64,000 bases of DNA, taken from Phallusia mammillata. Its lineage: Eukaryota. The notes under the pieces were generated by a model. The model did not search any database, was not told the origin of the DNA, and saw only the letters and a program-made list of their open reading frames with translations. Both the position numbers and the translations under genes were made by a program. Of the stretch, positions 1,210 to 19,920 are shown in pieces (position 1 is the stretch's first letter; each line of letters starts with the position of its first letter). The stretch is taken from assembly GCA_965637545.1 (NCBI GenBank), contig OZ281501.1, positions 15,314,001 through 15,378,000 on the forward strand, in the 5' to 3' direction.

Positions 1210-4200
1210 TTAGGGATTATCATTCATCGTGGATTCAATCCAACTTTGGAACTTGGAAACTTCTGTGTAAAATGAAGGAAACACAAATCCTTTTCTGTCA
1301 ACGTGAGCACATCTGTAGCCAAAGCTGACAATTCCAACTTGAATCCAACATGATTCGCCGGTGTTCGGGTTGTTGTACTTTAAACAATGTTTGTTATGTT
1401 TGTTTACTTGCATTGGTGCAATTAGAACAGCGCATGCTATGAAAGCAAAGCACACATTTCAGCGCATCTTATTCTGTACCCTTGCCAATCAATTTAAAAG
1501 ATAAAGGCAAATACAAAGGTATTGTGATGTTTTATGCCACAGACAATATGGAATTTACATTGGACACAGTGTCACGTTTTTTCTCAAACGAATGAGGCCT
1601 TAAAAGTAAAGTCCTGTCAATTATTTGACAGTAAAGTGGTGTCAATGAAAAAATCATTCAAAATATCCGTAAAACACATTTAAATCCTTTACACCAGTGG
1701 ATGGTTTAAAGCAGTAGTTCTCAAACTGTGCGTCGCGACGCCCTGATACGTCGTTTCAATTTTCCAAGGGCGTCGCAGAATAGTTGCGTTTCGTGGCTGA
1801 ACTCAGTTTATCTCATAAAAATTAGGTTAATACGTTCAGTGCGGTTGACGTATATGTACGTCCAAAGACGTTTTGCGTAGAATATGTATTGACGTTAAAT
1901 TACGTTCTTGATCAAAAATGCTGCTGCCCGTTAATGTACGTCGAGACCAAAAGCCCATGCAGCAAGTGCGTGATCGGCGCGTGTCTGGGGCGACGCTTGG
2001 CGGGCATTAAATTTGGTTTTAAATTCCTCATTAACTTTTATTTGCTGGTGCGTCGCAAGTCCAAAAAACTTTTCCAGAGGCGTCGCAACGAAAAATAGTT
2101 TGAGAAGTTTGAGACTGGTTTAAAGTATTAGAACTGTGTTTATTTGTTTCAATAGTTTTAATTTGACCCTCCATCGATTACAAATTCTCCTGGTTTTTGC
2201 TAGATTGTTTGCGAGTAAAGTAGAAAAACGAAAAACGATGTGAAAATCATGCAAAATTTGCGACAGTGCGTCTCGTATAGTTTACCAACCTCTCGCATAA
2301 GAGGTCCACCACTGTCTCCCTGACACGTGTCAGACAATCCGGTTAGCCAATCAGGGCTCTTCACGCAAATCATGCGATCTGTATACGTCAAATTTATTCC
2401 CGCAAGCCTGTTTATCTCGGTAATGGCATAATTGCATCTGTTGATTAAGGTATACAAATTAAAGTATTTAAAATATATTTTTAGTAACCAAATACCCTGA
2501 AGACATCCTAAAACTTATAAAATCACAAAATCTTAAAAATAAAGCTAACATAACCTCAAATAACTTACACGGCATCTGATTGAATTTGTTGGACAGCTTT
2601 TTTAAGACGGTATGGAACCGTACGGTCGTTTGACAAACTCCATCTACCGAATCCTGTAACAACGAAAGGTATTCGGCTATCTTCAACAAAGCGATCGGCA
2701 AGCCATCTTCCTGCATACAGAATTAGTTGTAAATTCTTGAATAGAAACTGTCTATACAAATTTACGACAAACCGCTCTGACAGACGGAAAACGTTAACTA
2801 CAAAACCTTTTGATGCAATCATGTTTTCTTTTTAATCCACTTGCCTTTCTTTTGACATTTCACATTCTCAGAGTCTCCATCTTCAATTATTTGGTTTCCA
2901 TTCTGGTTCACGTACTTGTCAATGGGGACACAAGTATTGCTGCATGGCAGACATATTGGTCTCACATAAGGTGAAAGGGGGATAGTTCCGTCAAACTCTG
3001 GTCTTCTGCTTGACCAAACCCAATTTAATCCATCCCTGATGGCGTGAAGTGCCACACCGACTCGAATCTAAACAACTTGTCAATAGTAATCTCAGCAACG
3101 ACCTGGGCAGACGTTGCAAGTTTTTACTTTTTACTAGGTAAGCAGTTTATGAAACAAGAGCTTAGAGAGGTAGTAAAGCTGCTCTATGAGGAAATTAGAC
3201 TTTTCTAAGGTTTCGAAAACTTTGGAGTACCAGTGCCACGTCATAATCAAAGTTGTTTCTTCCATGGCGATGTTCTCCATCAAAACCTTCATGAATAAAA
3301 ATTCGTCGCGGTTGGAACACTTTCATGGCTGGGTTAATAGCTTCTCTTGGCTTTGGCCGCACGAAAATTCCTCACAAAAATATGCAACAGTTTAAAGGTT
3401 GCCATTGGACAAAGGTGCGCGTAATAACATTGTCCAGGTTGTAATTACCTACTGCCACAGCCAGATGCCGTGTCATCTGTTGAATGTCCTCCCATTGGTC
3501 AAATAGAGACGCGGATGTAAGAACCCATTGCTGATTGATAAGGCTTCCACCACCGAAAATGCCTTTAAAAGTCTGTGAGTTTTAAAAGTCTGTGAGTGAG
3601 TTTAAATAGTTTTTTCTCAAAATTCGATTTCAGTAACACTTATATTGCATAACAGAGTCAATTCATAAAATGCGATTAGGTAAGAACTAAGCAAGCATTC
3701 AAAAATTGCTGCACAATATATCAAATGCAGTTAAATTAATATGCTAAATCGCAGGACAATTAGCTTCTTTGGAACCCGAAAATCGTGGTTGTAACAAATG
3801 CAATTTACTTGGTAAACAGTTAAACCATCTTTAGGCATTATTGCAGCTTGCCACGGCCAGGCGCTTTCCGTTTTGCTTCCTCCGATGACGCGACCAAACG
3901 ATGATCGACTAAAAATACTTTCTTTGTCGCCAGCTTGACCGCATTTCTTTAAATCTAAAAGAATTTGTTGTGTTGTTTGTGTGACTATTACATTTCAATT
4001 TTGGTAACATTTCGGCAAGTTAATTGCGCCCCGTCAAACCGTCATTTTTAAAAACAATTATTTAAAACATAGTTTATGTGTATAAATTGAAAAAATAATA
4101 ACATCTCACTGTGGCAGCATTGATCTATACATAAGGTCAAAAACGCATAAAAGCGCGTTGTATGTTTTAAATTTTACAACAATACTAAAATCTCCAGTTT

Positions 4201-7200
4201 AGTCAGGCATGTTAGATCGTGTACCTGTGGTAAAGTTTGCGACTTTGTCGAGGTAAGCATTGAGAAGGTAGTAGTTTTCTATTTTGATAAATTTGTCCCT
4301 GTCGCTTGCTAGCAGTCTCATCTCAGTCTCGGCATAGCTAGTCCCCGGGTACACAATGTTGCATGGGCTACATGCCGCGATAACGTATATCTGACGAAAA
4401 GTTAAACGTTATGTTTATTGGTTTATATTTGCCTAAGACACAATCTTTTCGTTATTGTGGACGCATTACACGTGCGATTATCACCAAGTTTAAAATTTGC
4501 TTGTAATTTGAAACCTTGTTTGTATAAACTCTCAAAGACTTTTTTCACCTTAAGAATATCACCAAATTGATTAAGCATTGTCGTTCTGGTTTCATACGGA
4601 TTTCCTCCAAAATTTGTTTTTCCTACATAAAACAAAATATCCTTTTTAAATTCTTTTAAATTATTTTAAATATGACTTGAAGGTAAACATATATCTTTGT
4701 TAAACAACGTTAAATTATAAAACAGTTTTGCCTAATTGCTAATGTGGATTTACTTTTCACACTAAACAACCTGTTATCTTGTGGGAGTTAAGAAACAGCA
4801 AACTTTAACACCCTTAATCGCTAGCTTCGTTTATTCTGCCGTCAAACAATTGTAGTTTGTCCTTTTTTAATCTCTAGTCTAGTATGGTTCCGAAACAAAA
4901 ATAAGCTATTATTTTTTAATTAATTTTATTCACGACAGCTCATTTTGTTTGCATTTGTATTTTTGTTCTATATTTTAAACAAAATTGTTTAGGATAGGCA
5001 ACATAATTGTTTTCAACATTTGAAACAGTAGGCCACATCATTTTTTTTATCATTTTTTTTTGTTGTGACAACTTCGCTGCTATTCCCGAGCAGTGATTGT
5101 AATGTGTTCTACCAATCCAAATGCTTTGATATGGGTCCTCGATTTGTTTATATGGGTCCCCGGTTTGAGTCATTTTCTGTAGGTGCCCGTTCGTGGAAAC
5201 GTTGTCGTGGAAATGGTGATGGGTTGCTATGTGTCTGAGGTGACACTTTTTGTTGCATGCTACTTTTAGGCCTCGAGCCCATAAGCTAAACCAGTGTGTG
5301 TGAATTTTGTGAGCCGCTATTGCAAGGCTCTAAGTCTTTGTAGACTTGGAGAGACAGTATTTGATGTAAGATCAAATTAACTGGGGTTTTGCAACTAATT
5401 CTGTTTAAACTGTAACAAAACAAGTCCAACACCTTACCATCCGTAAACAAAAAGACGTGACGTTCTTTTTCGTCATCAATATGAAAACCTAATATCAATT
5501 GCCTGTGAACTTCCTCAAGCGCCTTTTTAGTTGCCGTATTGTTTCCTATTGTTGTAGCCAAAACTCCTGTAAGGAAACGTTGGAGTTTTTGAGGCGCAAC
5601 ATTTGGTATCAAATTGTTTTGTATTGCAAGTAAGTTGTATTGTTTCCCACCGTTTTCAAAATCCGCTTGGCACTTGTCGAGTCGCAAAAGAACAGCGGTT
5701 GAGTTTTGTTCGTTGTTTTGCAAAGGAATCCTCACTTCGAAATCACTAGCAAACACCATTAAACCATAGTTTATGGTTCCTCGATCATAATTGGAAAGCT
5801 GTTGAAAGGTACGAATTTAAAAGATAAACGTAATTTGTGCACCTTACCATCTTACCCGTTTCACTAAGTTTTTCGCAAACGCGATTGCATACTTGAACTG
5901 TATGGAATTAATGCTTTCTGATACATCGAAAATAAAAGCTATTTCGTGGCGTTTGTTCTCTGTTGTGGAAATCCAAGGGGCGTGGCCCTGCTGAGGAAAG
6001 CTTGCAACGCTTGCAACTCGTCTCCGAGGATCTGTAAACCATGAGAAAAAAGTTTTACCAAAAGATTATAATAGACCATTTTCAAAAGATGAAGTTTTTT
6101 TAACCAGCAAACACCTAACGATGGGCGTAAAACGAACAGAGACAAACGTTTATGTAATTAAATAAATGATTTAAATCATTCTCACACAAGCTTCGGCAGG
6201 TCGTCAACAAACCACTCCATCGTCCGTTTTCCGTGCACATACGCCTCGCTGCTCCGATTAAAACATAGCCTGGCTGGCAGCGAAATTGTACGATCGAGTT
6301 AACAGGGTAAGAATCACGACTTTCTGACTCAATAACAAGGTTTCGGCCATCTAGATGTCGCGTTGGATCATCGCAGAAAATTTCTGAAATCGCAGTTTAG
6401 GGTTTAAGTTTTAAAACGTTGTAACGCTGCTTAACAGTGCTCACACAATTAAAGAGCAAATATTGCGAAATAGTCAGAATTTTAAACACACGTGTTACTT
6501 AGCAGAACCATAATAGTAAAATACTCATATTAGTTTATATGTTATAACCTAGTTATGCTTCCGTAAAGGTGCGTAAAAGTAAAGGTATATATTCACCTGC
6601 ACACTGCACTTGAGCACGTGTCCACGATCTTCGGGAAGTGCAACGAATTTGAGGACCTACTTGCCCCATCCCGGGTGGACAAGTATACTCAACAAAGTCG
6701 TCAAACTGAAAGTTTTCGGTCACCCGTATCACAGTATTGTTGACGAAACGATAAACTTTGAATCCTTTGCTTCCGTAGGCGCTAGGTGGATTTCCATCAC
6801 ACTGTGATTCTATGGCAGAAAAAGCAAGAAGTGCAGACCGGAATGTACGTTCGGTCTGGGTTTTGTAAATCATTTAAATTTATCCGATAGCGAATTAAAT
6901 CTTTTGCATATGCCTATATGTATCTCAAGTGTTTGGACAAGGTCGAGTTACTTGATGTGCTATATGTGTTAACCACCTTGTCGATCCAATATAAAGTCCT
7001 ATTGGGCAAAATATTTATGATAAAATTGTGGAGGCTTTTTGCCCGAAATAGGATAGCTTTTTTGCCTTACGAGTGCAACACAGTTACGCAACGCGGGCTA
7101 AACATTAGGCGAAAGAAAAAAAATACATTCAGCGCATATTTTAGCATGGCTTGCATTGAAGCTTTCATTTATTAACCACTTCTTTCAACTATTGTTTAGT

Positions 7201-8745
7201 GCGGCATTAAAAATATATACATAAATGGTATCATGTTCACTAAATCACTTAAAGAGAAAGAAAATACGTACTCGGATTAAAACAGGACATCCCGCAATGA
7301 CCGTCACACTCGCAACGCTTTCGTCCTTTGCAATCAGAATTGGAATTGCAAGGTTTTCTGCAGTCTTGTGCTGCAGCTTGAGCCAATTCGGAATTTCGCT
7401 GAGGACAATCACCTGAATATTGATCGTTGTTTAACAGTTTCATACATGTTTGTATTTATGATCAAAATATGGTCATTCTTATCAGGCGCTTGTGTTTGCT
7501 TATTGCGAATTTTGCGTGAAGATCTATTTCTTTTTTATGTACAGACATTGATAGAGTCAGTAACCAGTTTAACGAGTTTGGCCAGAGGTTCTCATACGGG
7601 TTCCAATTTGCTCGTTTAGGGGGACTTTTTTTTTCCTGGAAGGAAATTTGCTGCAAAAGAGGTTTAAAGAAGAAATTCTGTGGTTAAAAACTCGTTTTTA
7701 ATGTTTGTTTACTTGACACATAAAAAACCTATCACTAGGAATATCTACAATACACAAGAAATGTTGCGGGAACAGCTGTGACAAAAAAAAAACTATAAGA
7801 ACAACTGGATTTAACTTAGCTTTTAAATGTGTTGAAAGAATTTGCGCATTTCATGTGCTTACCGCATCTTGCGTATTCGTAGCCTTCATCTTCACTCGAT
7901 GAGCAGTCATTCCTTCCATCACACAACTGCTCATTGTTGAGACAAACGCCATTAAGACATTGAAACCTACCATCACTGCACAAGCGTAATCCTGGAGTTG
8001 CTGCATACAAATGTGCAATTAATTGAACTGCCAAATATTGGTTTTGTGTTGGCAACATTTACAACACATTGCACTATGATTTTAGAAACTTTTCTCCATT
8101 TAGAATTTAAACACAGATGTTACAAAATTTGTTTTGACAGCCTCGGAATTAGGCCAACCTGGTATGGGCGGCGGTAATTACCTTGAAATACTAGTTTTAA
8201 AATCTCAGGGAACCTAATCTCACAACGGGGGCTGTCTCCCGAATTCTGTAAAGGCTTAGATTACTGCAAAAACGTCTCACCAACAAAGTCAATATTCTCG
8301 CACGCTGAGGTATAGCTTATGGCTAAGAGACTTTAAACACCAGATACAAACTCGATCAACGGCCCTAGAGAAATGCCTTTAACAAACTGACGATGCCCTA
8401 CCGGCCTACAGTGTAGGGCACATTCTAAAATAGAGCAATCAACGGTTATGAAGCACCCACCCTTGAGGAGAAGCAACAAAGGCACAACAACACAAAAAAA
8501 CTAAGATATCACAAACAAACATAGGACTCATCAAAAATTGACTACTTAGATATTTTCATAAAGATCAACGACCGGTTGTGTAACTGAACACCTTGCATTG
8601 GCCTTTGGATTTGGCCAATAAGGTTTTAAACGTCGGCGGTAAAATGTCACATGTGTTGTTGTTGTACACAACTACAGATCAACAGAAAAGTAGACTTACT
8701 TGTGATGCAAATGACAAGAACTGCAAATTCTAGAATGGCACGCAT
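1210..8745 (-). CDS. Complement factor B/C2-like mosaic protein (signal peptide-LDLa-WAP-2xCCP-vWA-trypsin-fold domain), predicted catalytically inactive; about 888 aa, 16 coding exons
   Basis: Exons in transcript order, all phases compatible (total 2667 nt): 8745-8700 (MRAILEFAVLVICIT signal peptide), 8000-7863 (LDLa CSDGRFQCLNGVCLNNEQLCDGRNDC), 7412-7272 (8-Cys WAP), 6809-6597 and 6383-6186 (CCP1, CCP2), 6031-5856 (YPRRR linker, vWA MIDAS DVSES), 5798-5438 (NTAT, FTDG), 4622-4549, 4390-4225, 3954-3809 (CG...FGR/VIGG...WPWQ), 3572-3449 (FGGGSL...WVLTSASL), 3370-3231 (DYDVAL), 3067-2845 (VRPICLP), 2710-2569, 2437-2286 (DTCQGDSGGP), 1436-1210 (GIVSFG...YTEVSKFQSWI, TAA). The acceptors of exon 12 and of the last exon are the least certain. 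CCP-vWA-serine protease order is diagnostic of the Bf/C2 family. Confidence 0.9.
1712..2117. mobile_element. Non-autonomous hAT-type element (MITE), 406 bp, in the last intron of the Bf-like gene
   Basis: Left end CAGTAGTTCTCAAACT; right end reads CAGTCTCAAACT on the reverse strand. Identical 8-bp TSD GTTTAAAG at 1704-1711 and 2118-2125. Sub-terminal GCGTCGC motifs. Confidence 0.85.
3564..3597. repeat. 17-bp tandem duplication spanning a splice acceptor of the Bf-like gene
   Basis: TTTAAAAGTCTGTGAGT x2. On the minus strand this gives two CTCACAG/ACTTTTAAA acceptors 17 nt apart. Confidence 0.9.
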
Positions 8746-11299: not shown

Positions 11300-12712
11300 A
11301 TGCAAAACGAAACAGAAACATGCCCTATGATCAACCCAGGCACAGCAAATGGTGGCAAAAGAGAAGGCTCAAAAGTAAATGTAGAAGTTGGACAACCTTC
11401 TCCTGAAAGATGGGTGATAGTTTTCATCACGTGTGTTGTGACGAGCATGCGATGTTTTGTATTGGCAGCATTTGGTCTCACCAACAATGTCATGGCCAAT
11501 TACTTTAACGTGGAGCCTTGGCAAATTGACTGGCTTTCGAATGTTCGCGCTTTAACCATTGTTTTGGTTTGTATACCCCTGTTGTTTATATTAAGAAAAT
11601 TCAGCGTGAAAACGTCTATTGTTGCAATGATCGTATGTTCTGCTGTAAGTTTAAGCCTGTCCAGTCTGGCAGTTTCATTTCGTCAAGGTTATTTTATCGC
11701 TATTTTTGGCGAGGTTATGTCTGCTCTCTCCACAACAATCTGGTTCCCACTGAAAAGCTCAATCGCTGCTGTGTGGTTTCCAGCCAACGAAATCGCCTAC
11801 GCCATTGGTATCATGTATATTGGACGGGCTGTTGGAGAAGCTGCTGGTGCTGTGATCGCCCCTTATTTAGTTTCAATCAGTGATAGTGCATCAAAGGTCC
11901 AAATACGTTTGTCCGCATTGTTTGGATCATTCGCAATTGTCACATGGGCTATCCTTATGTTTGTTGTGTTGTTTACGAAACCACGACCCAAGCATCCTCC
12001 AAGCATTGCTCAACTCAAAGTGTTGCAGTTACAAGAGTTACAAGAAAGCACTAGCTTCAAAGAAGAGCTAATAAAATTCAAAAATGTGCAACTAAAATTG
12101 TTGACCAACGTCCACTTTTTAACAGCGTGGTTTGCACGAATTGCTATCGACCCAGTTCCACGATCCACAACCACCTTGCTATCATCGATACTTCAAGCAA
12201 ACTTCAGAAAGAACGGGAATACCAACGTTGACGGAGGCTTTATGATTATGGGACTTTGGCTCATGTCGATTGTGGGCAGTTTTTCAGCAGGTCGTTTGCT
12301 GGTGGTAACTGGTCGTTATAAAGCATCGGTAGTGGTGTCCACTGGCATGGCAAGCGTTTCTTGCGTTGTTGGGATAGCTGGACTAGCAATTACTTCAATT
12401 TCGATGGTTTATGCCAGCCAAATATGTTTGGGATTTTTCGTGGGACTTGCATTAGTGAGTGTTACAGAACTTCTGGTCCAAGTTACTTACCCGACCCGAA
12501 TCACAGATGTATATGTTGTCAATCCAGTTGGCGTAGGAATCATGTTGGTCATTCAAACTACTATTGCTAGATTGTTACTCGAAAAGTTTGGACCTATCGC
12601 AGCATTTGCTATGGAACTGTTTTATCTACTGTTACCAACATGTTCGTTGCCCTTTACAAAGATGCCATTCTACCGCCAAGAAGCAGAGGCCAGCACCATT
12701 GAAGATCGATAA
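11300..12712 (+). CDS. Intronless MFS transporter, FLVCR/SLC49 family-like (paralog 1), 470 aa
   Basis: Single ATG-to-TAA ORF with about 12 hydrophobic segments. Family-type motifs RW.IV, VEPWQIDWLS, AAVWFPANE, P.HPPS.AQ and ELLVQVTYP resemble FLVCR/SLC49 (WFGPKE, PPS.AQ, E.TYP). Confidence 0.88.
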   Translation: MQNETETCPMINPGTANGGKREGSKVNVEVGQPSPERWVIVFITCVVTSMRCFVLAAFGLTNNVMANYFNVEPWQIDWLSNVRALTIVLVCIPLLFILRKFSVKTSIVAMIVCSAVSLSLSSLAVSFRQGYFIAIFGEVMSALSTTIWFPLKSSIAAVWFPANEIAYAIGIMYIGRAVGEAAGAVIAPYLVSISDSASKVQIRLSALFGSFAIVTWAILMFVVLFTKPRPKHPPSIAQLKVLQLQELQESTSFKEELIKFKNVQLKLLTNVHFLTAWFARIAIDPVPRSTTTLLSSILQANFRKNGNTNVDGGFMIMGLWLMSIVGSFSAGRLLVVTGRYKASVVVSTGMASVSCVVGIAGLAITSISMVYASQICLGFFVGLALVSVTELLVQVTYPTRITDVYVVNPVGVGIMLVIQTTIARLLLEKFGPIAAFAMELFYLLLPTCSLPFTKMPFYRQEAEASTIEDR

Positions 12713-12999: not shown

Positions 13000-13990
13000 C
13001 CAATTATATTAAGCGTATTCGTAGACAAAATATTGAATTGAATTATGCGAAAATAAGGAGATGCGAAAAATATGCAAAGATTAGTACGCCGAATGCCTTG
13101 TCAGTTAAATATTGCAGTTGGTTCTTCATTTAGATTTGTACTGACTTGTAGCAAAAAAACGGCGTGGAATGCTGAAATGCCGCAATGTAAAACATACTGT
13201 AGCATTGCAAAACAATGCCGGAAACATCTGCTAAGTTAGCGTTAAACATGAGATGATAACGAATAGCGTAAACGGCAAGGCAGCTAAAGTCAAGTAATGC
13301 AAGTAGCTACGTGTTACGAAACACAATACATAATCCAGACCGGACACACAACCTCTGAATGAATTAAGCAAAACACGTACCAAGTAGAAGCAGTTTTAGA
13401 CATAAAAAGTGGCTACTATGTAATACAAAGAAACTGTACAAGTAGCAACAAAATAAATACCTGGTATAGATTTTTTAACCAGTGTCTGGCTCTAAACAGA
13501 GGTTGTAACATACTGTCCTTAAGCTTCTCCCAAAAACCAACAACTCATCATCAAACTAGTAGCAAGGGGAACTTGGTTGACTGGAAACCAAACAGCCGCA
13601 CTCGAACATCTCAATGGAAAACACCCAACCGTTGCCAAAACTAACGTTGTCTGACCAAGTATTGCCACTTGGTATCCGTTTGGAATATACAGCGCCCGAC
13701 AAATCAAGGAAAACCCGATGGCAATGCAAAAGGTTGCGGCGGCGATTGCAGGTTTGAGTCCGAACATTTTAAGTCCAAGAAGCAAAGGTGCACTGCACAA
13801 CGTCATGATTAGTGCGTGGACAATTGACAAACCAATCAATTTGCCAAATCAATTTGTTCTATGTTGATTGTGCCAAACGCCGTCAAGTTATACCCTTGAA
13901 AAAAAGATATAAAGAAGTTAAGAGATGTTAAGAACCACTTTTTGGCGACGACTTGATAATGTATTCACATCGTTCCAGGTTTTCGCCGTA
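13000..13990 (-). pseudogene. Inverted, degenerate SLC49/FLVCR-like copy
   Basis: Minus-strand translation gives IKSSPK(R)WFL...FFQGYNLTAFGTIN, WQIDWF (frameshift) SIVHALIMTLCSAPLL...ILGQT...AAVWFPVNQVPLATS...FLGEA*GQYV...*. This is collinear with both intact neighbours but has at least two frameshifts and several in-frame stops. Ends are approximate. Confidence 0.8.
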
Positions 13991-19736: not shown

Positions 19737-19920
19737 NNNNNNNNNNNNNNNNNNNNNNNNNNNNNNNNNNNNNNNNNNNNNNNNNNNNNNNNNNNNNNNN
19801 NNNNNNNNNNNNNNNNNNNNNNNNNNNNNNNNNNNNNNNNNNNNNNNNNNNNNNNNNNNNNNNNNNNNNNNNNNNNNNNNNNNNNNNNNNNNNNNNNNNN
19901 NNNNNNNNNNNNNNNNNNNN
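19737..19920. other. Assembly gap (184 N)
   Basis: Run of N bases. ORFs 19610-19954 and 19672-19944 are artefacts of reading through it. Confidence 1.

What the first reader, a model, noticed from the sequence alone, without database searches (positions are those of the whole stretch)
3231..3572. Factor B-like gene encodes a pseudoprotease: catalytic His lost together with both Cys of the 42-58 disulfide
Seen: the His57 motif reads WVLTSASLF instead of TAAHC, and the upstream strand reads IFGGGSL instead of FCGGSL. Asp102 (DYDVAL), Ser195 (GDSGGP), the S1 Asp189 (DTCQG), the R/VIGG activation site and the vWA MIDAS (DVSES, T, TDG) are all retained. Established: trypsin-fold catalysis needs His57, and factor B is the catalytic subunit of the alternative-pathway C3 convertase. 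Inference: loss of both paired cysteines in an otherwise intact domain suggests a long-maintained enzyme-dead Bf. It could still dock on C3b through the MIDAS and act as a decoy or regulator of complement, or as a scaffold.
Basis: partly seen in the sequence, partly recalled or inferred. Interest (0 to 1): 0.8.

Follow-up and report, generated by a model that had tools for sequence, protein, structure and literature searches.

The report
His-less factor B paralog, sea squirt
A sea-squirt gene of the complement factor B family is intact but has lost the catalytic histidine of its protease domain, so it is probably an enzyme-dead paralog; the missing cysteine pair that made this look ancient is normal for all sea-squirt factor B genes.

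Summary
On the minus strand lies an intact 17-exon, 839-residue secreted gene (signal peptide, LDLa, WAP, 2 CCP, vWA with MIDAS, trypsin-like domain). Its His57 motif reads WVLTSASLF. Asp102, Asp189, Gly193, Asp194, Ser195 and the R|VIGG site are kept. Contigs of two DNA runs match the exon without a difference, and the window holds no alternative His-bearing exon.

All 40-odd ascidian factor B-lineage protease domains I aligned (Ciona Bf-1, Halocynthia Bf, Styela, Clavelina, Phallusia) have Gly/Ala at 42 and Val/Leu/Ile/Met at 58, and most keep His57. The Cys42-Cys58 loss is ancestral and says nothing about the age of the His loss.

Other evidence still favours a maintained pseudoprotease. 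The closest relative, a Phallusia mammillata paralog (P0003, 77% identical in the protease domain, His intact, expressed), has an equally long branch (0.16 vs 0.16; 14 vs 17 unique changes). Of 52 family-conserved columns only three are broken, all in the active-site cleft (A55S, H57S, G226S).

I found no transcript and no ortholog, and could not compute dN/dS. Triad-less factor B homologues are already described in spiders and a clam. This is a new member of a known kind, of moderate interest.

The parts
8700..8745 (-). Exon 1: start codon and signal peptide MRAILEFAVLVICIT, donor ACAA|GTAAGT
   Evidence: It aligns with the N-terminus of P0003.
7863..8000 (-). Exon 2: LDL-receptor class A module
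   Evidence: Pfam Ldl_recept_a, E=1.7e-7; model.
7272..7412 (-). Exon 3: WAP four-disulfide-core module (C-x-C variant)
   Evidence: Pfam WAP, E=1.9e-5, above the gathering score.
6597..6809 (-). Exon 4: CCP/sushi module 1
   Evidence: Pfam Sushi; 69% identical to P0003.
6186..6383 (-). Exon 5: CCP/sushi module 2. It is followed directly by the linker; the third CCP seen in P0003 has no exon here.
   Evidence: Pfam Sushi, E=5e-12; alignment. The intron 6032-6185 is only 154 nt.
5856..6031 (-). Exon 6: linker (YPRRRVASVASFPQQG...) and start of the vWA with MIDAS DVSES
5438..5798 (-). Exons 7-8 of the vWA (5651-5798 and 5438-5566), separated by an 84-nt in-frame intron (5567-5650). They carry the MIDAS Thr (NTAT) and Asp (FTDG).
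   Evidence: Intron inferred because P0003 lacks those 28 residues; MIDAS columns.
4225..4622 (-). Exons 9-10 of the vWA (4549-4622 and 4225-4390)
3809..3954 (-). Protease exon 1: CGQAG interchain Cys and the GR|VIGG zymogen activation site
   Evidence: A spliced RNA contig of the paralog P0003 joins the equivalents of 3809 and 3572.
3449..3572 (-). Protease exon 2, the core of the finding: FGGGSL (Gly at position 42, codon 3552-3554) and WVLTSASLF (A55S 3513-3515, H57S 3507-3509 TCT, Leu at position 58 3504-3506)
3231..3370 (-). Protease exon 3: enlarged 99-loop (GEHRHGRNNF, with two lineage-specific His) and Asp102 (DYDVAL, 3240-3242)
2845..3067 (-). Protease exon 4: family-specific insertion IRVGVALHAIRDG...RPICLPC. 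It ends at a GC-AG intron (AAAG|GCAAGT).
2569..2710 (-). Protease exon 5
2290..2437 (-). Protease exon 6: Asp189 (2329-2331), Cys191, Gly193, Asp194, Ser195 (2311-2313) in DTCQGDSGGP
1210..1377 (-). Protease exon 7: Ser214-Phe-Gly216, Cys220, G226S (codon 1273-1275), stop codon TAA 1210-1212
   Evidence: Boundary corrected from the family alignment; G226S.
1700..2100 (.). High-copy interspersed repeat inside the last intron. It is not part of the coding sequence.
   Evidence: Summed contig depth of 10^5-10^6 and many joints and loose ends.

Best explanation
This is a real, intact, secreted paralog of the ascidian complement factor B lineage, most likely in Phallusia mammillata. It sits at the end of a tandem family. 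Its architecture is signal peptide-LDLa-WAP-CCP-CCP-vWA(MIDAS)-trypsin-like domain. The protease domain has lost the general base His57 (H57S) and carries two further changes in the active-site cleft (A55S, G226S). The rest of the fold is kept: the zymogen activation site R|VIGG with Asp194, the oxyanion-hole Gly193, Ser195, Asp102 and the S1 Asp189. Shown: the sequence state, gene integrity, the family-wide absence of Cys42/Cys58, and no acceleration relative to the catalytically intact, expressed sister gene. Inferred: the protein is a pseudoprotease kept by selection. It probably still undergoes activation cleavage and still offers a P1-Arg-binding pocket and a Mg-dependent vWA site, so it would bind a partner without cleaving it. 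The partner would most plausibly be a C3b-like thioester protein or a substrate or inhibitor of its active paralogs. It would then act as a competitor or regulator of the active family members, or as a cleavage-dependent binding module like HGF or insect serine protease homologues.
For: The 17-exon ORF of 839 aa has no stop or frameshift. It has a start codon, a signal peptide and GT-AG sites throughout, apart from one GC-AG. Two DNA runs match the exon exactly. H57S is unique among 47 ascidian Bf-lineage domains, while positions 42 and 58 are non-Cys in all of them. The relative-rate test gives 14 model-unique vs 17 P0003-unique changes in the protease domain (p=0.72) and 8 vs 8 in the vWA. 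On the ML tree the gene is sister to P0003 (SH-aLRT 97) with end branches of 0.16 and 0.16, whereas other dead domains sit on long branches. Only 3 of 52 columns conserved at >=90% are broken, all at the active site; active members break 0-6. The 85 differences from P0003 avoid conserved columns (3/52, hypergeometric P=2e-4). The MIDAS residues are kept. His to Ser (TCT) needs two nucleotide steps, and the neighbouring A55S and G226S also changed, which suggests the loss is not brand new.
Against: No transcript of this gene was seen. The only RNA contigs touching it differ by 2/53 to 11/91 letters, and the listed differences change residues to those of P0003. No protein of this gene is in the 5.8-billion-protein collection. 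No ortholog is known, so the age of H57S is unknown. dN/dS could not be computed because no CDS of P0003 is on record. Model-unique substitutions are somewhat more radical than those of P0003 (mean BLOSUM62 -0.07 vs +0.94, one-sided p=0.046). The gene lacks the CCP adjacent to the linker. The two DNA runs may come from one specimen, so a private null allele is not excluded.
Confidence: 0.58

Rival explanations
1. A recently disabled gene or null allele: H57S knocked out a working protease not long ago, and the gene is drifting towards a pseudogene but has not yet acquired a stop or frameshift.
For: No RNA evidence for this gene. No annotated protein or transcript fragment in the databases. Three hits in the active-site cleft and slightly more radical substitutions. 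Modules are missing relative to P0003. H57S is found in no other sequence.
Against: The terminal branch is no longer than that of the active, expressed sister in either the protease domain or the vWA. Outside the active site, 0 of 49 conserved columns are broken. All 17 exons, the splice sites and the signal peptide are intact. The active-site motif needed at least three nucleotide changes in two codons (55 and 57), which is hard to fit into a neutral period short enough to leave a 2.5-kb ORF untouched (inference).
Confidence: 0.27
2. Still a working protease with a non-canonical base. Candidates are substrate-assisted catalysis (a substrate His at P2 or P1', as shown for engineered H57A trypsin; from my own knowledge, not checked here) or one of the two new His residues in the enlarged 99-loop (GEHRHG, where P0003 has REDRDG) taking over.
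For: Ser195, Asp102, Gly193, Asp194, Asp189 and the activation site are all retained, whereas most other dead domains of the family lost Ser195. D600H is a model-specific change and residue 602 is also His; both lie in the loop that flanks position 57.
Against: No natural S1 protease is known to work this way (my own knowledge). G226S also alters the S1 pocket, and non-Gly at 226 is seen mostly in dead domains. No structural model of this protein could be made here, so no geometry supports it.
Confidence: 0.08
3. Artefact: a sequencing or assembly error at the His codon, or transcripts that use another exon carrying His.
For: The DNA runs that agree may derive from the assembled specimen.
Against: Contigs of two runs have 0 differences over the exon. 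His to Ser(TCT) needs two base changes, and there are further neighbouring changes. No other exon-like W[VI][LVI][TS] or AHC motif lies within the gene. The exon is 124 nt, so skipping it would shift the frame.
Confidence: 0.03

Closest known systems
Phallusia mammillata 'C3/C5 convertase' A0A6F9D9Y8 (P0003; also named as a CiBf-3-type factor B by its nr record)
   Same: Colinear from signal peptide to C-terminus. Identity is 70-77% in LDLa, WAP and the CCPs, 61% in the vWA and 77% in the protease domain. It shares the family insertion after Asp102, the same R|VIGG site and the same lack of Cys42/Cys58.
   Different: P0003 keeps TAAHVF (His57), Ala55 and Gly226. It has an extra WAP-CCP pair and an extra CCP before the linker, and it is expressed.
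Ascidian factor B proteins (Ciona intestinalis Bf-1, Halocynthia roretzi Bf; Yoshizaki et al. 2005 and Ji et al. 2000 as cited in PMC5465252)
   Same: LDLa/CCP-vWA-protease architecture, MIDAS, R-V/I-x-GG activation motif, no His-loop disulfide.
   Different: About 28-35% identity. They carry an intact triad and have no WAP module.
[quoted passage not shown]
   Same: CCP-vWA-protease proteins with conserved MIDAS, only two CCPs and a non-catalytic protease domain. The authors likewise propose loss of activity or another mechanism.
   Different: Those proteins replace all three triad residues (S/N/P in Lox-FB). Here only His57 is replaced. The lineages are independent.
Vertebrate factor B / C2 (PDB 2ok5, 9qj4 and others)
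   Same: The CCP-linker-vWA segment of the sister P0003 has C2 and factor B as its best solved relatives (E=3e-8). The MIDAS motif is shared.
   Different: The vertebrate protease domain has the Cys42-Cys58 bridge, lacks a classical Ile16 activation site and is a working C3/C5 convertase subunit. By sequence the ascidian protease domain is closer to plasma kallikrein, thrombin and tryptase.
Non-catalytic S1 homologues (haptoglobin, HGF/MSP, protein Z, azurocidin, insect clip-domain serine protease homologues); from my own knowledge
   Same: Trypsin fold retained, one or more triad residues replaced, and binding or cofactor roles. In HGF the function depends on the activation cleavage.
   Different: None has a vWA/MIDAS module. 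Most have lost Ser195 as well.

Membership tests
Complement factor B / C2 family (CCP-vWA-serine protease) | One or more N-terminal CCP (sushi) modules | tested here: met
   Pfam Sushi on exons 6597-6809 (E=3e-4) and 6186-6383 (E=5e-12). There are only two CCPs; the linker-adjacent CCP is absent.
Complement factor B / C2 family (CCP-vWA-serine protease) | vWA domain with a complete MIDAS (DxSxS, Thr, Asp) | tested here: met
   DVSES, NTAT and FTDG align with the family MIDAS columns. The Pfam VWA hits on single exons are weak, but the 61%-identical P0003 vWA scores E=2e-17, and its best solved relatives are C2 and factor B.
Complement factor B / C2 family (CCP-vWA-serine protease) | C-terminal S1 (trypsin-fold) domain | tested here: met
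   Pfam Trypsin on three exons. The full domain aligns with 46 family domains.
Complement factor B / C2 family (CCP-vWA-serine protease) | Phylogenetic placement with recognised ascidian Bf genes | tested here: met
   The protease-domain tree puts it with P0003 and P0007 (100*) inside a starred clade (96*) that also holds Halocynthia Bf, Styela 'complement factor B-like' proteins and Ciona Bf-1. No vertebrate Bf was in the tree.
Complement factor B / C2 family (CCP-vWA-serine protease) | Catalytic triad His57-Asp102-Ser195, giving C3/C5 convertase activity | tested here: not met
   Ser replaces His57; Asp102 and Ser195 are present. Activity itself cannot be tested here.
Complement factor B / C2 family (CCP-vWA-serine protease) | Mg-dependent binding to C3b and cleavage by a factor D-like enzyme | not testable with these tools
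   Needs protein biochemistry.
Pseudoprotease / serine protease homologue (non-catalytic S1 fold kept by selection) | S1 fold with at least one triad residue replaced | tested here: met
   H57S.
Pseudoprotease / serine protease homologue (non-catalytic S1 fold kept by selection) | Evidence of purifying selection after loss of catalysis | tested here: inconclusive
   Branch lengths equal to the active sister and conserved columns spared. However there is no dN/dS and no ortholog, and the timing of H57S on the branch is unknown.
Pseudoprotease / serine protease homologue (non-catalytic S1 fold kept by selection) | Expressed protein | tested here: inconclusive
   Two small RNA-type runs show only the paralog's transcripts. 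No adult-tissue data were available.

The most novel reading that the evidence does not exclude
Sea squirts, which have expanded factor B into a tandem family on shuffled module chains, keep a dedicated enzyme-dead member. It still undergoes zymogen-type activation and still docks through its MIDAS and S1 pocket. It would then act as an endogenous dominant-negative brake or adaptor on the C3 convertase, a way of regulating complement not described in any animal. A rarer variant of this reading: the retained Ser195, Asp102 and oxyanion hole, together with new His residues in the enlarged 99-loop, mark a rewired catalytic centre.
Probability: 0.2. Interest if true: 0.65.

Novelty: new member of a known kind. 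Interest (0 to 1): 0.36.

Why it matters
If the protein is expressed and binds C3b without cleaving C3, it would be a natural dominant-negative factor B in the sister group of vertebrates. That would be a handle on how the alternative pathway was regulated before the vertebrate regulators were in place. It would also be a natural counterpart of the engineered catalytically dead factor B used in structural work. More immediately, the check corrects a trap. In tunicates the absence of the Cys42-Cys58 'histidine-loop' disulfide is the family norm and must not be read as a sign of decay. Dead protease domains have also arisen repeatedly in this lineage (Clavelina, Styela, Ciona, Phallusia), which makes the family a good system for studying how pseudoproteases are born.

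Tried and rejected
1. First gene model: the last exon was started too far upstream, adding 21 residues (VACAVLIAPMQVNKHNKHCLK) that no relative has. I corrected it to 1377 using the family alignment. An 84-nt in-frame segment of the vWA was reclassified as an intron because P0003 lacks it. The representative search was therefore run with a query whose first 19 residues are intronic. It still found the family.

2. RNA support: the single look-up of sequencing runs and read-laying runs gave no holder on record as RNA. The 1-2% of words shared with the RNA-type runs come from the intron repeat at 1700-2100. The few exon hits belong to the paralog P0003.

3. dN/dS: the look-up of encoding contigs has no DNA for P0003. 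The handful of nucleotide differences listed by read laying (about 8 non-synonymous and 4 synonymous, from variable loops) is too small and too biased to use.

4. Orthologs or transcript fragments: two searches of the 5.8-billion-protein collection (length ranges 560-1780 and 208-663 aa) found nothing closer than P0003 and P0007.

5. Structure prediction of this protein was left out.

6. Reading considered and rejected: 'Cys loss is coupled to His loss'.

7. Reading considered and rejected: 'an alternative AAHC exon exists'.
Full report
**What is in the sequence**

The finding lies on the minus strand. Translating 3449-3572 gives TFKGIFGGGSLINQQWVLTSASLFDQWEDIQQMTRHLAVAV. phmmer against all PDB chains aligns GGSLINQQWVLTSASLF with GGSLIGHQWVLTAAHCF of plasma kallikrein and with trypsins. 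In chymotrypsin numbering this gives:
- Ser at position 57 (codon TCT, 3507-3509)
- Leu at position 58
- Ser at position 55
- Gly at position 42

The interval 3231-3572 corresponds exactly to two exons.

**Gene model**

I derived the exons by hand from splice sites and reading frame, then corrected them against relatives.
- The gene has 17 exons between 8745 and 1210 and encodes 839 residues with no stop or frameshift.
- The domain order is signal peptide, LDLa (Pfam E=1.7e-7), WAP (1.9e-5), two CCPs (3e-4 and 5e-12), a vWA, and a seven-exon trypsin-like cassette.
- All introns are GT-AG except one GC-AG after 2845.
- The boundaries 3809|3572 are supported by homology. A spliced RNA contig of a paralog joins the same two points.
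- A six-frame scan finds no other His-loop-like motif in the gene. Skipping the 124-nt exon would shift the frame.

**Is it an error?**

Contigs of two DNA runs (two samples of one study) cover 3054-3545 and about 3520-6000 with no difference. These runs may derive from the specimen that was assembled, so this rules out an assembly slip but not a private allele.

**Relatives and organism**

An exhaustive phmmer search with the last exon and two searches of the 90%-clustered collection gave two close relatives, both from Phallusia mammillata.
- P0003 (UniProt A0A6F9D9Y8, 'C3/C5 convertase', 1018 aa) is colinear with this gene. Identity is 77% in the protease domain, 61% in the vWA and about 70-77% in LDLa, WAP and the CCPs.
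- P0007 (745 aa) is 50% identical in the protease domain.
- No protein of this gene itself is in the collection.

RNA-type contigs from runs with the same species label as the DNA holders differ from the window by 2/53 to 11/91 letters. Every listed amino-acid-changing difference converts the residue to that of P0003 (N667D, G670E, Q672G, N681D, E506K, S507K). The genome is therefore very probably P. mammillata, and P0003 is an expressed paralog. Earlier notes of this scan place a tandem family of such genes just before the window and a two-WAP factor B about 290 kb away. The latter fits the architecture of P0003.

**The cysteine argument fails**

I extracted 47 protease domains from ascidian relatives with a family HMM and read off the key columns. 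The set covered Ciona Bf-1, Halocynthia Bf, many Styela and Clavelina 'complement factor B-like' proteins, and Phallusia.
- Position 42 is Gly or Ala in every complete domain (Asn or Asp only in three truncated, triad-dead fragments). Position 58 is Val, Leu, Ile, Met or Ala in the complete domains. None has Cys at either position.
- This includes the 37 domains that have His57.
- Echinoderm, spider and fish relatives recovered in the same searches keep FCGGS...AAHC.

The histidine-loop disulfide was therefore lost in the ancestor of the ascidian factor B lineage. Its absence here is unrelated to the His loss and carries no information about how long the enzyme has been dead. H57S itself is unique to this gene. 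The sister P0003 reads TAAHVF.

**Is the gene decaying?**

Four tests say no, within their limits.
1. The ORF, splice sites and signal peptide are intact.
2. Relative rate: with P0007 as outgroup, the protease domain has 14 changes unique to this gene and 17 unique to P0003 (p=0.72). In the vWA, polarised with ten other ascidian Bf proteins, the count is 8 vs 8.
3. In a maximum-likelihood tree of 43 domains, the gene and P0003 are sisters (SH-aLRT 97) with end branches of 0.16 and 0.16. Other triad-dead domains sit on long branches (1.93 for Styela P0115; 0.61 for Clavelina P0012 unit 2 against 0.15-0.19 for its sisters).
4. Of 52 columns conserved at >=90% among 34 triad-intact domains, this gene breaks three: A55S, H57S and G226S, all in the active-site cleft. 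It breaks none of the other 49. Active members break 0-6. The 85 differences from P0003 avoid conserved columns (3 of 52; P=2e-4).

Weak counter-signals exist. The changes unique to this gene are somewhat more radical (mean BLOSUM62 -0.07 vs +0.94, p=0.046). Non-Gly at 226 is found mostly in dead domains.

His to Ser(TCT) needs two nucleotide steps and Ala55 also changed. That is at least three changes in two codons. A neutral period short enough to leave a 2.5-kb ORF untouched would hardly allow that, so I infer the cleft was remodelled while the rest of the gene stayed under constraint. This is inference, not measurement.

**What could not be shown**

- Expression: only two small RNA-type runs could be laid, and they show the paralog only.
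- dN/dS: no DNA for P0003 is on record.
- Orthologs: none are in the databases.
- 3D geometry: the spliced protein has no reference, so it could not be folded.

**Family membership**

The CCP-linker-vWA segment of P0003 has human C2 (E=3e-8) and factor B as its best solved relatives. The protease domain by sequence is nearer plasma kallikrein, thrombin and tryptase, and unlike vertebrate Bf it has a classical R|VIGG activation site. The architecture, the MIDAS and the tree position with recognised ascidian Bf genes put it in the factor B/C2 family. The catalytic-triad criterion is not met.

The gene lacks the CCP next to the linker, which in P0003 aligns to CCP3 of C2, and it lacks a WAP-CCP pair. 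The short introns (154 and 213 nt) leave no room for hidden exons.

**Mechanism**

My best reading (about 0.58) is a maintained pseudoprotease.
- It would be secreted and cleavable at R|VIGG, so that Val16 can pair with the retained Asp194 and order the S1 pocket (Asp189) and the oxyanion hole.
- It could then hold a P1-Arg ligand and bind through its MIDAS, but it could not turn over substrate.
- It would act as a competitor or regulator of the active paralogs, or as a cleavage-dependent binding module.

The steps from 'kept under constraint' onward are inferred. The rivals are:
- a recent knock-out or null allele (about 0.27);
- a protease with a non-canonical base, either substrate-assisted or using the two new His residues in the enlarged 99-loop, GEHRHG vs REDRDG in P0003 (about 0.08);
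- an artefact (about 0.03).

**Novelty**

Triad-less factor B-like proteins with conserved MIDAS and two CCPs are already described in the spiders Loxosceles laeta and Hasarius adansoni and in the clam Ruditapes decussatus, with the same open question about function (PMC4714745). Factor B is known to be expanded in ascidians, with 17 genes in Styela clava (PMC7540406). Non-catalytic S1 homologues are common in general.

I found no paper on Phallusia factor B and none on dead ascidian Bf paralogs. My alignment shows other undescribed dead domains in Clavelina, Styela and Ciona. This case is thus a new member of a known kind. It is unusual only in that His57 alone is lost.

Noticed in passing
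window 3449-3572 and P0003, P0007, P0089, P0145 and others: All ascidian factor B-lineage protease domains lack the Cys42-Cys58 histidine-loop disulfide (Gly/Ala at 42, an aliphatic residue at 58) but keep a classical R-V/I-x-GG activation site. Echinoderm, spider and fish relatives keep the disulfide. This looks like a shared derived trait of the tunicate lineage.
   Followed up: yes
P0012 residues 1350-1703 (Clavelina); P0026 1052-1427, P0115 972-1319, P0006/P0112 (Styela); P0097 (Ciona intestinalis XP_078495167.1): Catalytically dead protease domains recur independently in the ascidian Bf lineage. Examples: H57Q/D189S/S195G in a second complete WAP-CCP-vWA-protease unit of Clavelina; S195N or S195G in Styela; tandem Tyr57/Gly195 domains in Styela; an S195G CCP-protease protein that is sister to Ciona Bf-1. 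Most sit on long branches, unlike the gene studied here.
   Followed up: partly
window 6032-6185 and 6384-6596, compared with P0003 residues about 180-300 and 345-415: Relative to its sister, the gene lacks a WAP-CCP pair and the CCP next to the vWA linker. The introns at those places are only 154 and 213 nt, so the modules are truly absent rather than missed.
   Followed up: partly
window 3255-3275 (residues 598-602): The enlarged 99-loop reads GEHRHG where P0003 reads REDRDG: two Asp-to-His differences and one Arg-to-Gly, next to the disabled catalytic centre. A contig of DNA run X2 carries the P0003-type residues.
   Followed up: no
window 1700-2100: An interspersed repeat in the last intron has very high copy number (summed contig depth of 10^5-10^6 in the DNA runs) and is also present in RNA-type contigs. 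It explains the 1-2% of words shared with the RNA runs.
   Followed up: no
window 2839-2845: A GC-AG intron (AAAG|GCAAGT) is the only reading-frame-compatible donor after protease exon 4.
   Followed up: partly
window 5567-5650: An 84-nt intron is in frame and free of stops. Its retention would insert 28 residues into the vWA just before the MIDAS Thr.
   Followed up: partly
window 11300-12712 (+): A single-exon 470-residue ORF with a Major Facilitator Superfamily match (Pfam MFS_1, E=1.6e-16). A related-looking hydrophobic ORF fragment lies on the opposite strand at 13519-13839.
   Followed up: partly
window 19737-19920: A run of 184 N (assembly gap or masked). I left it untouched.
   Followed up: no
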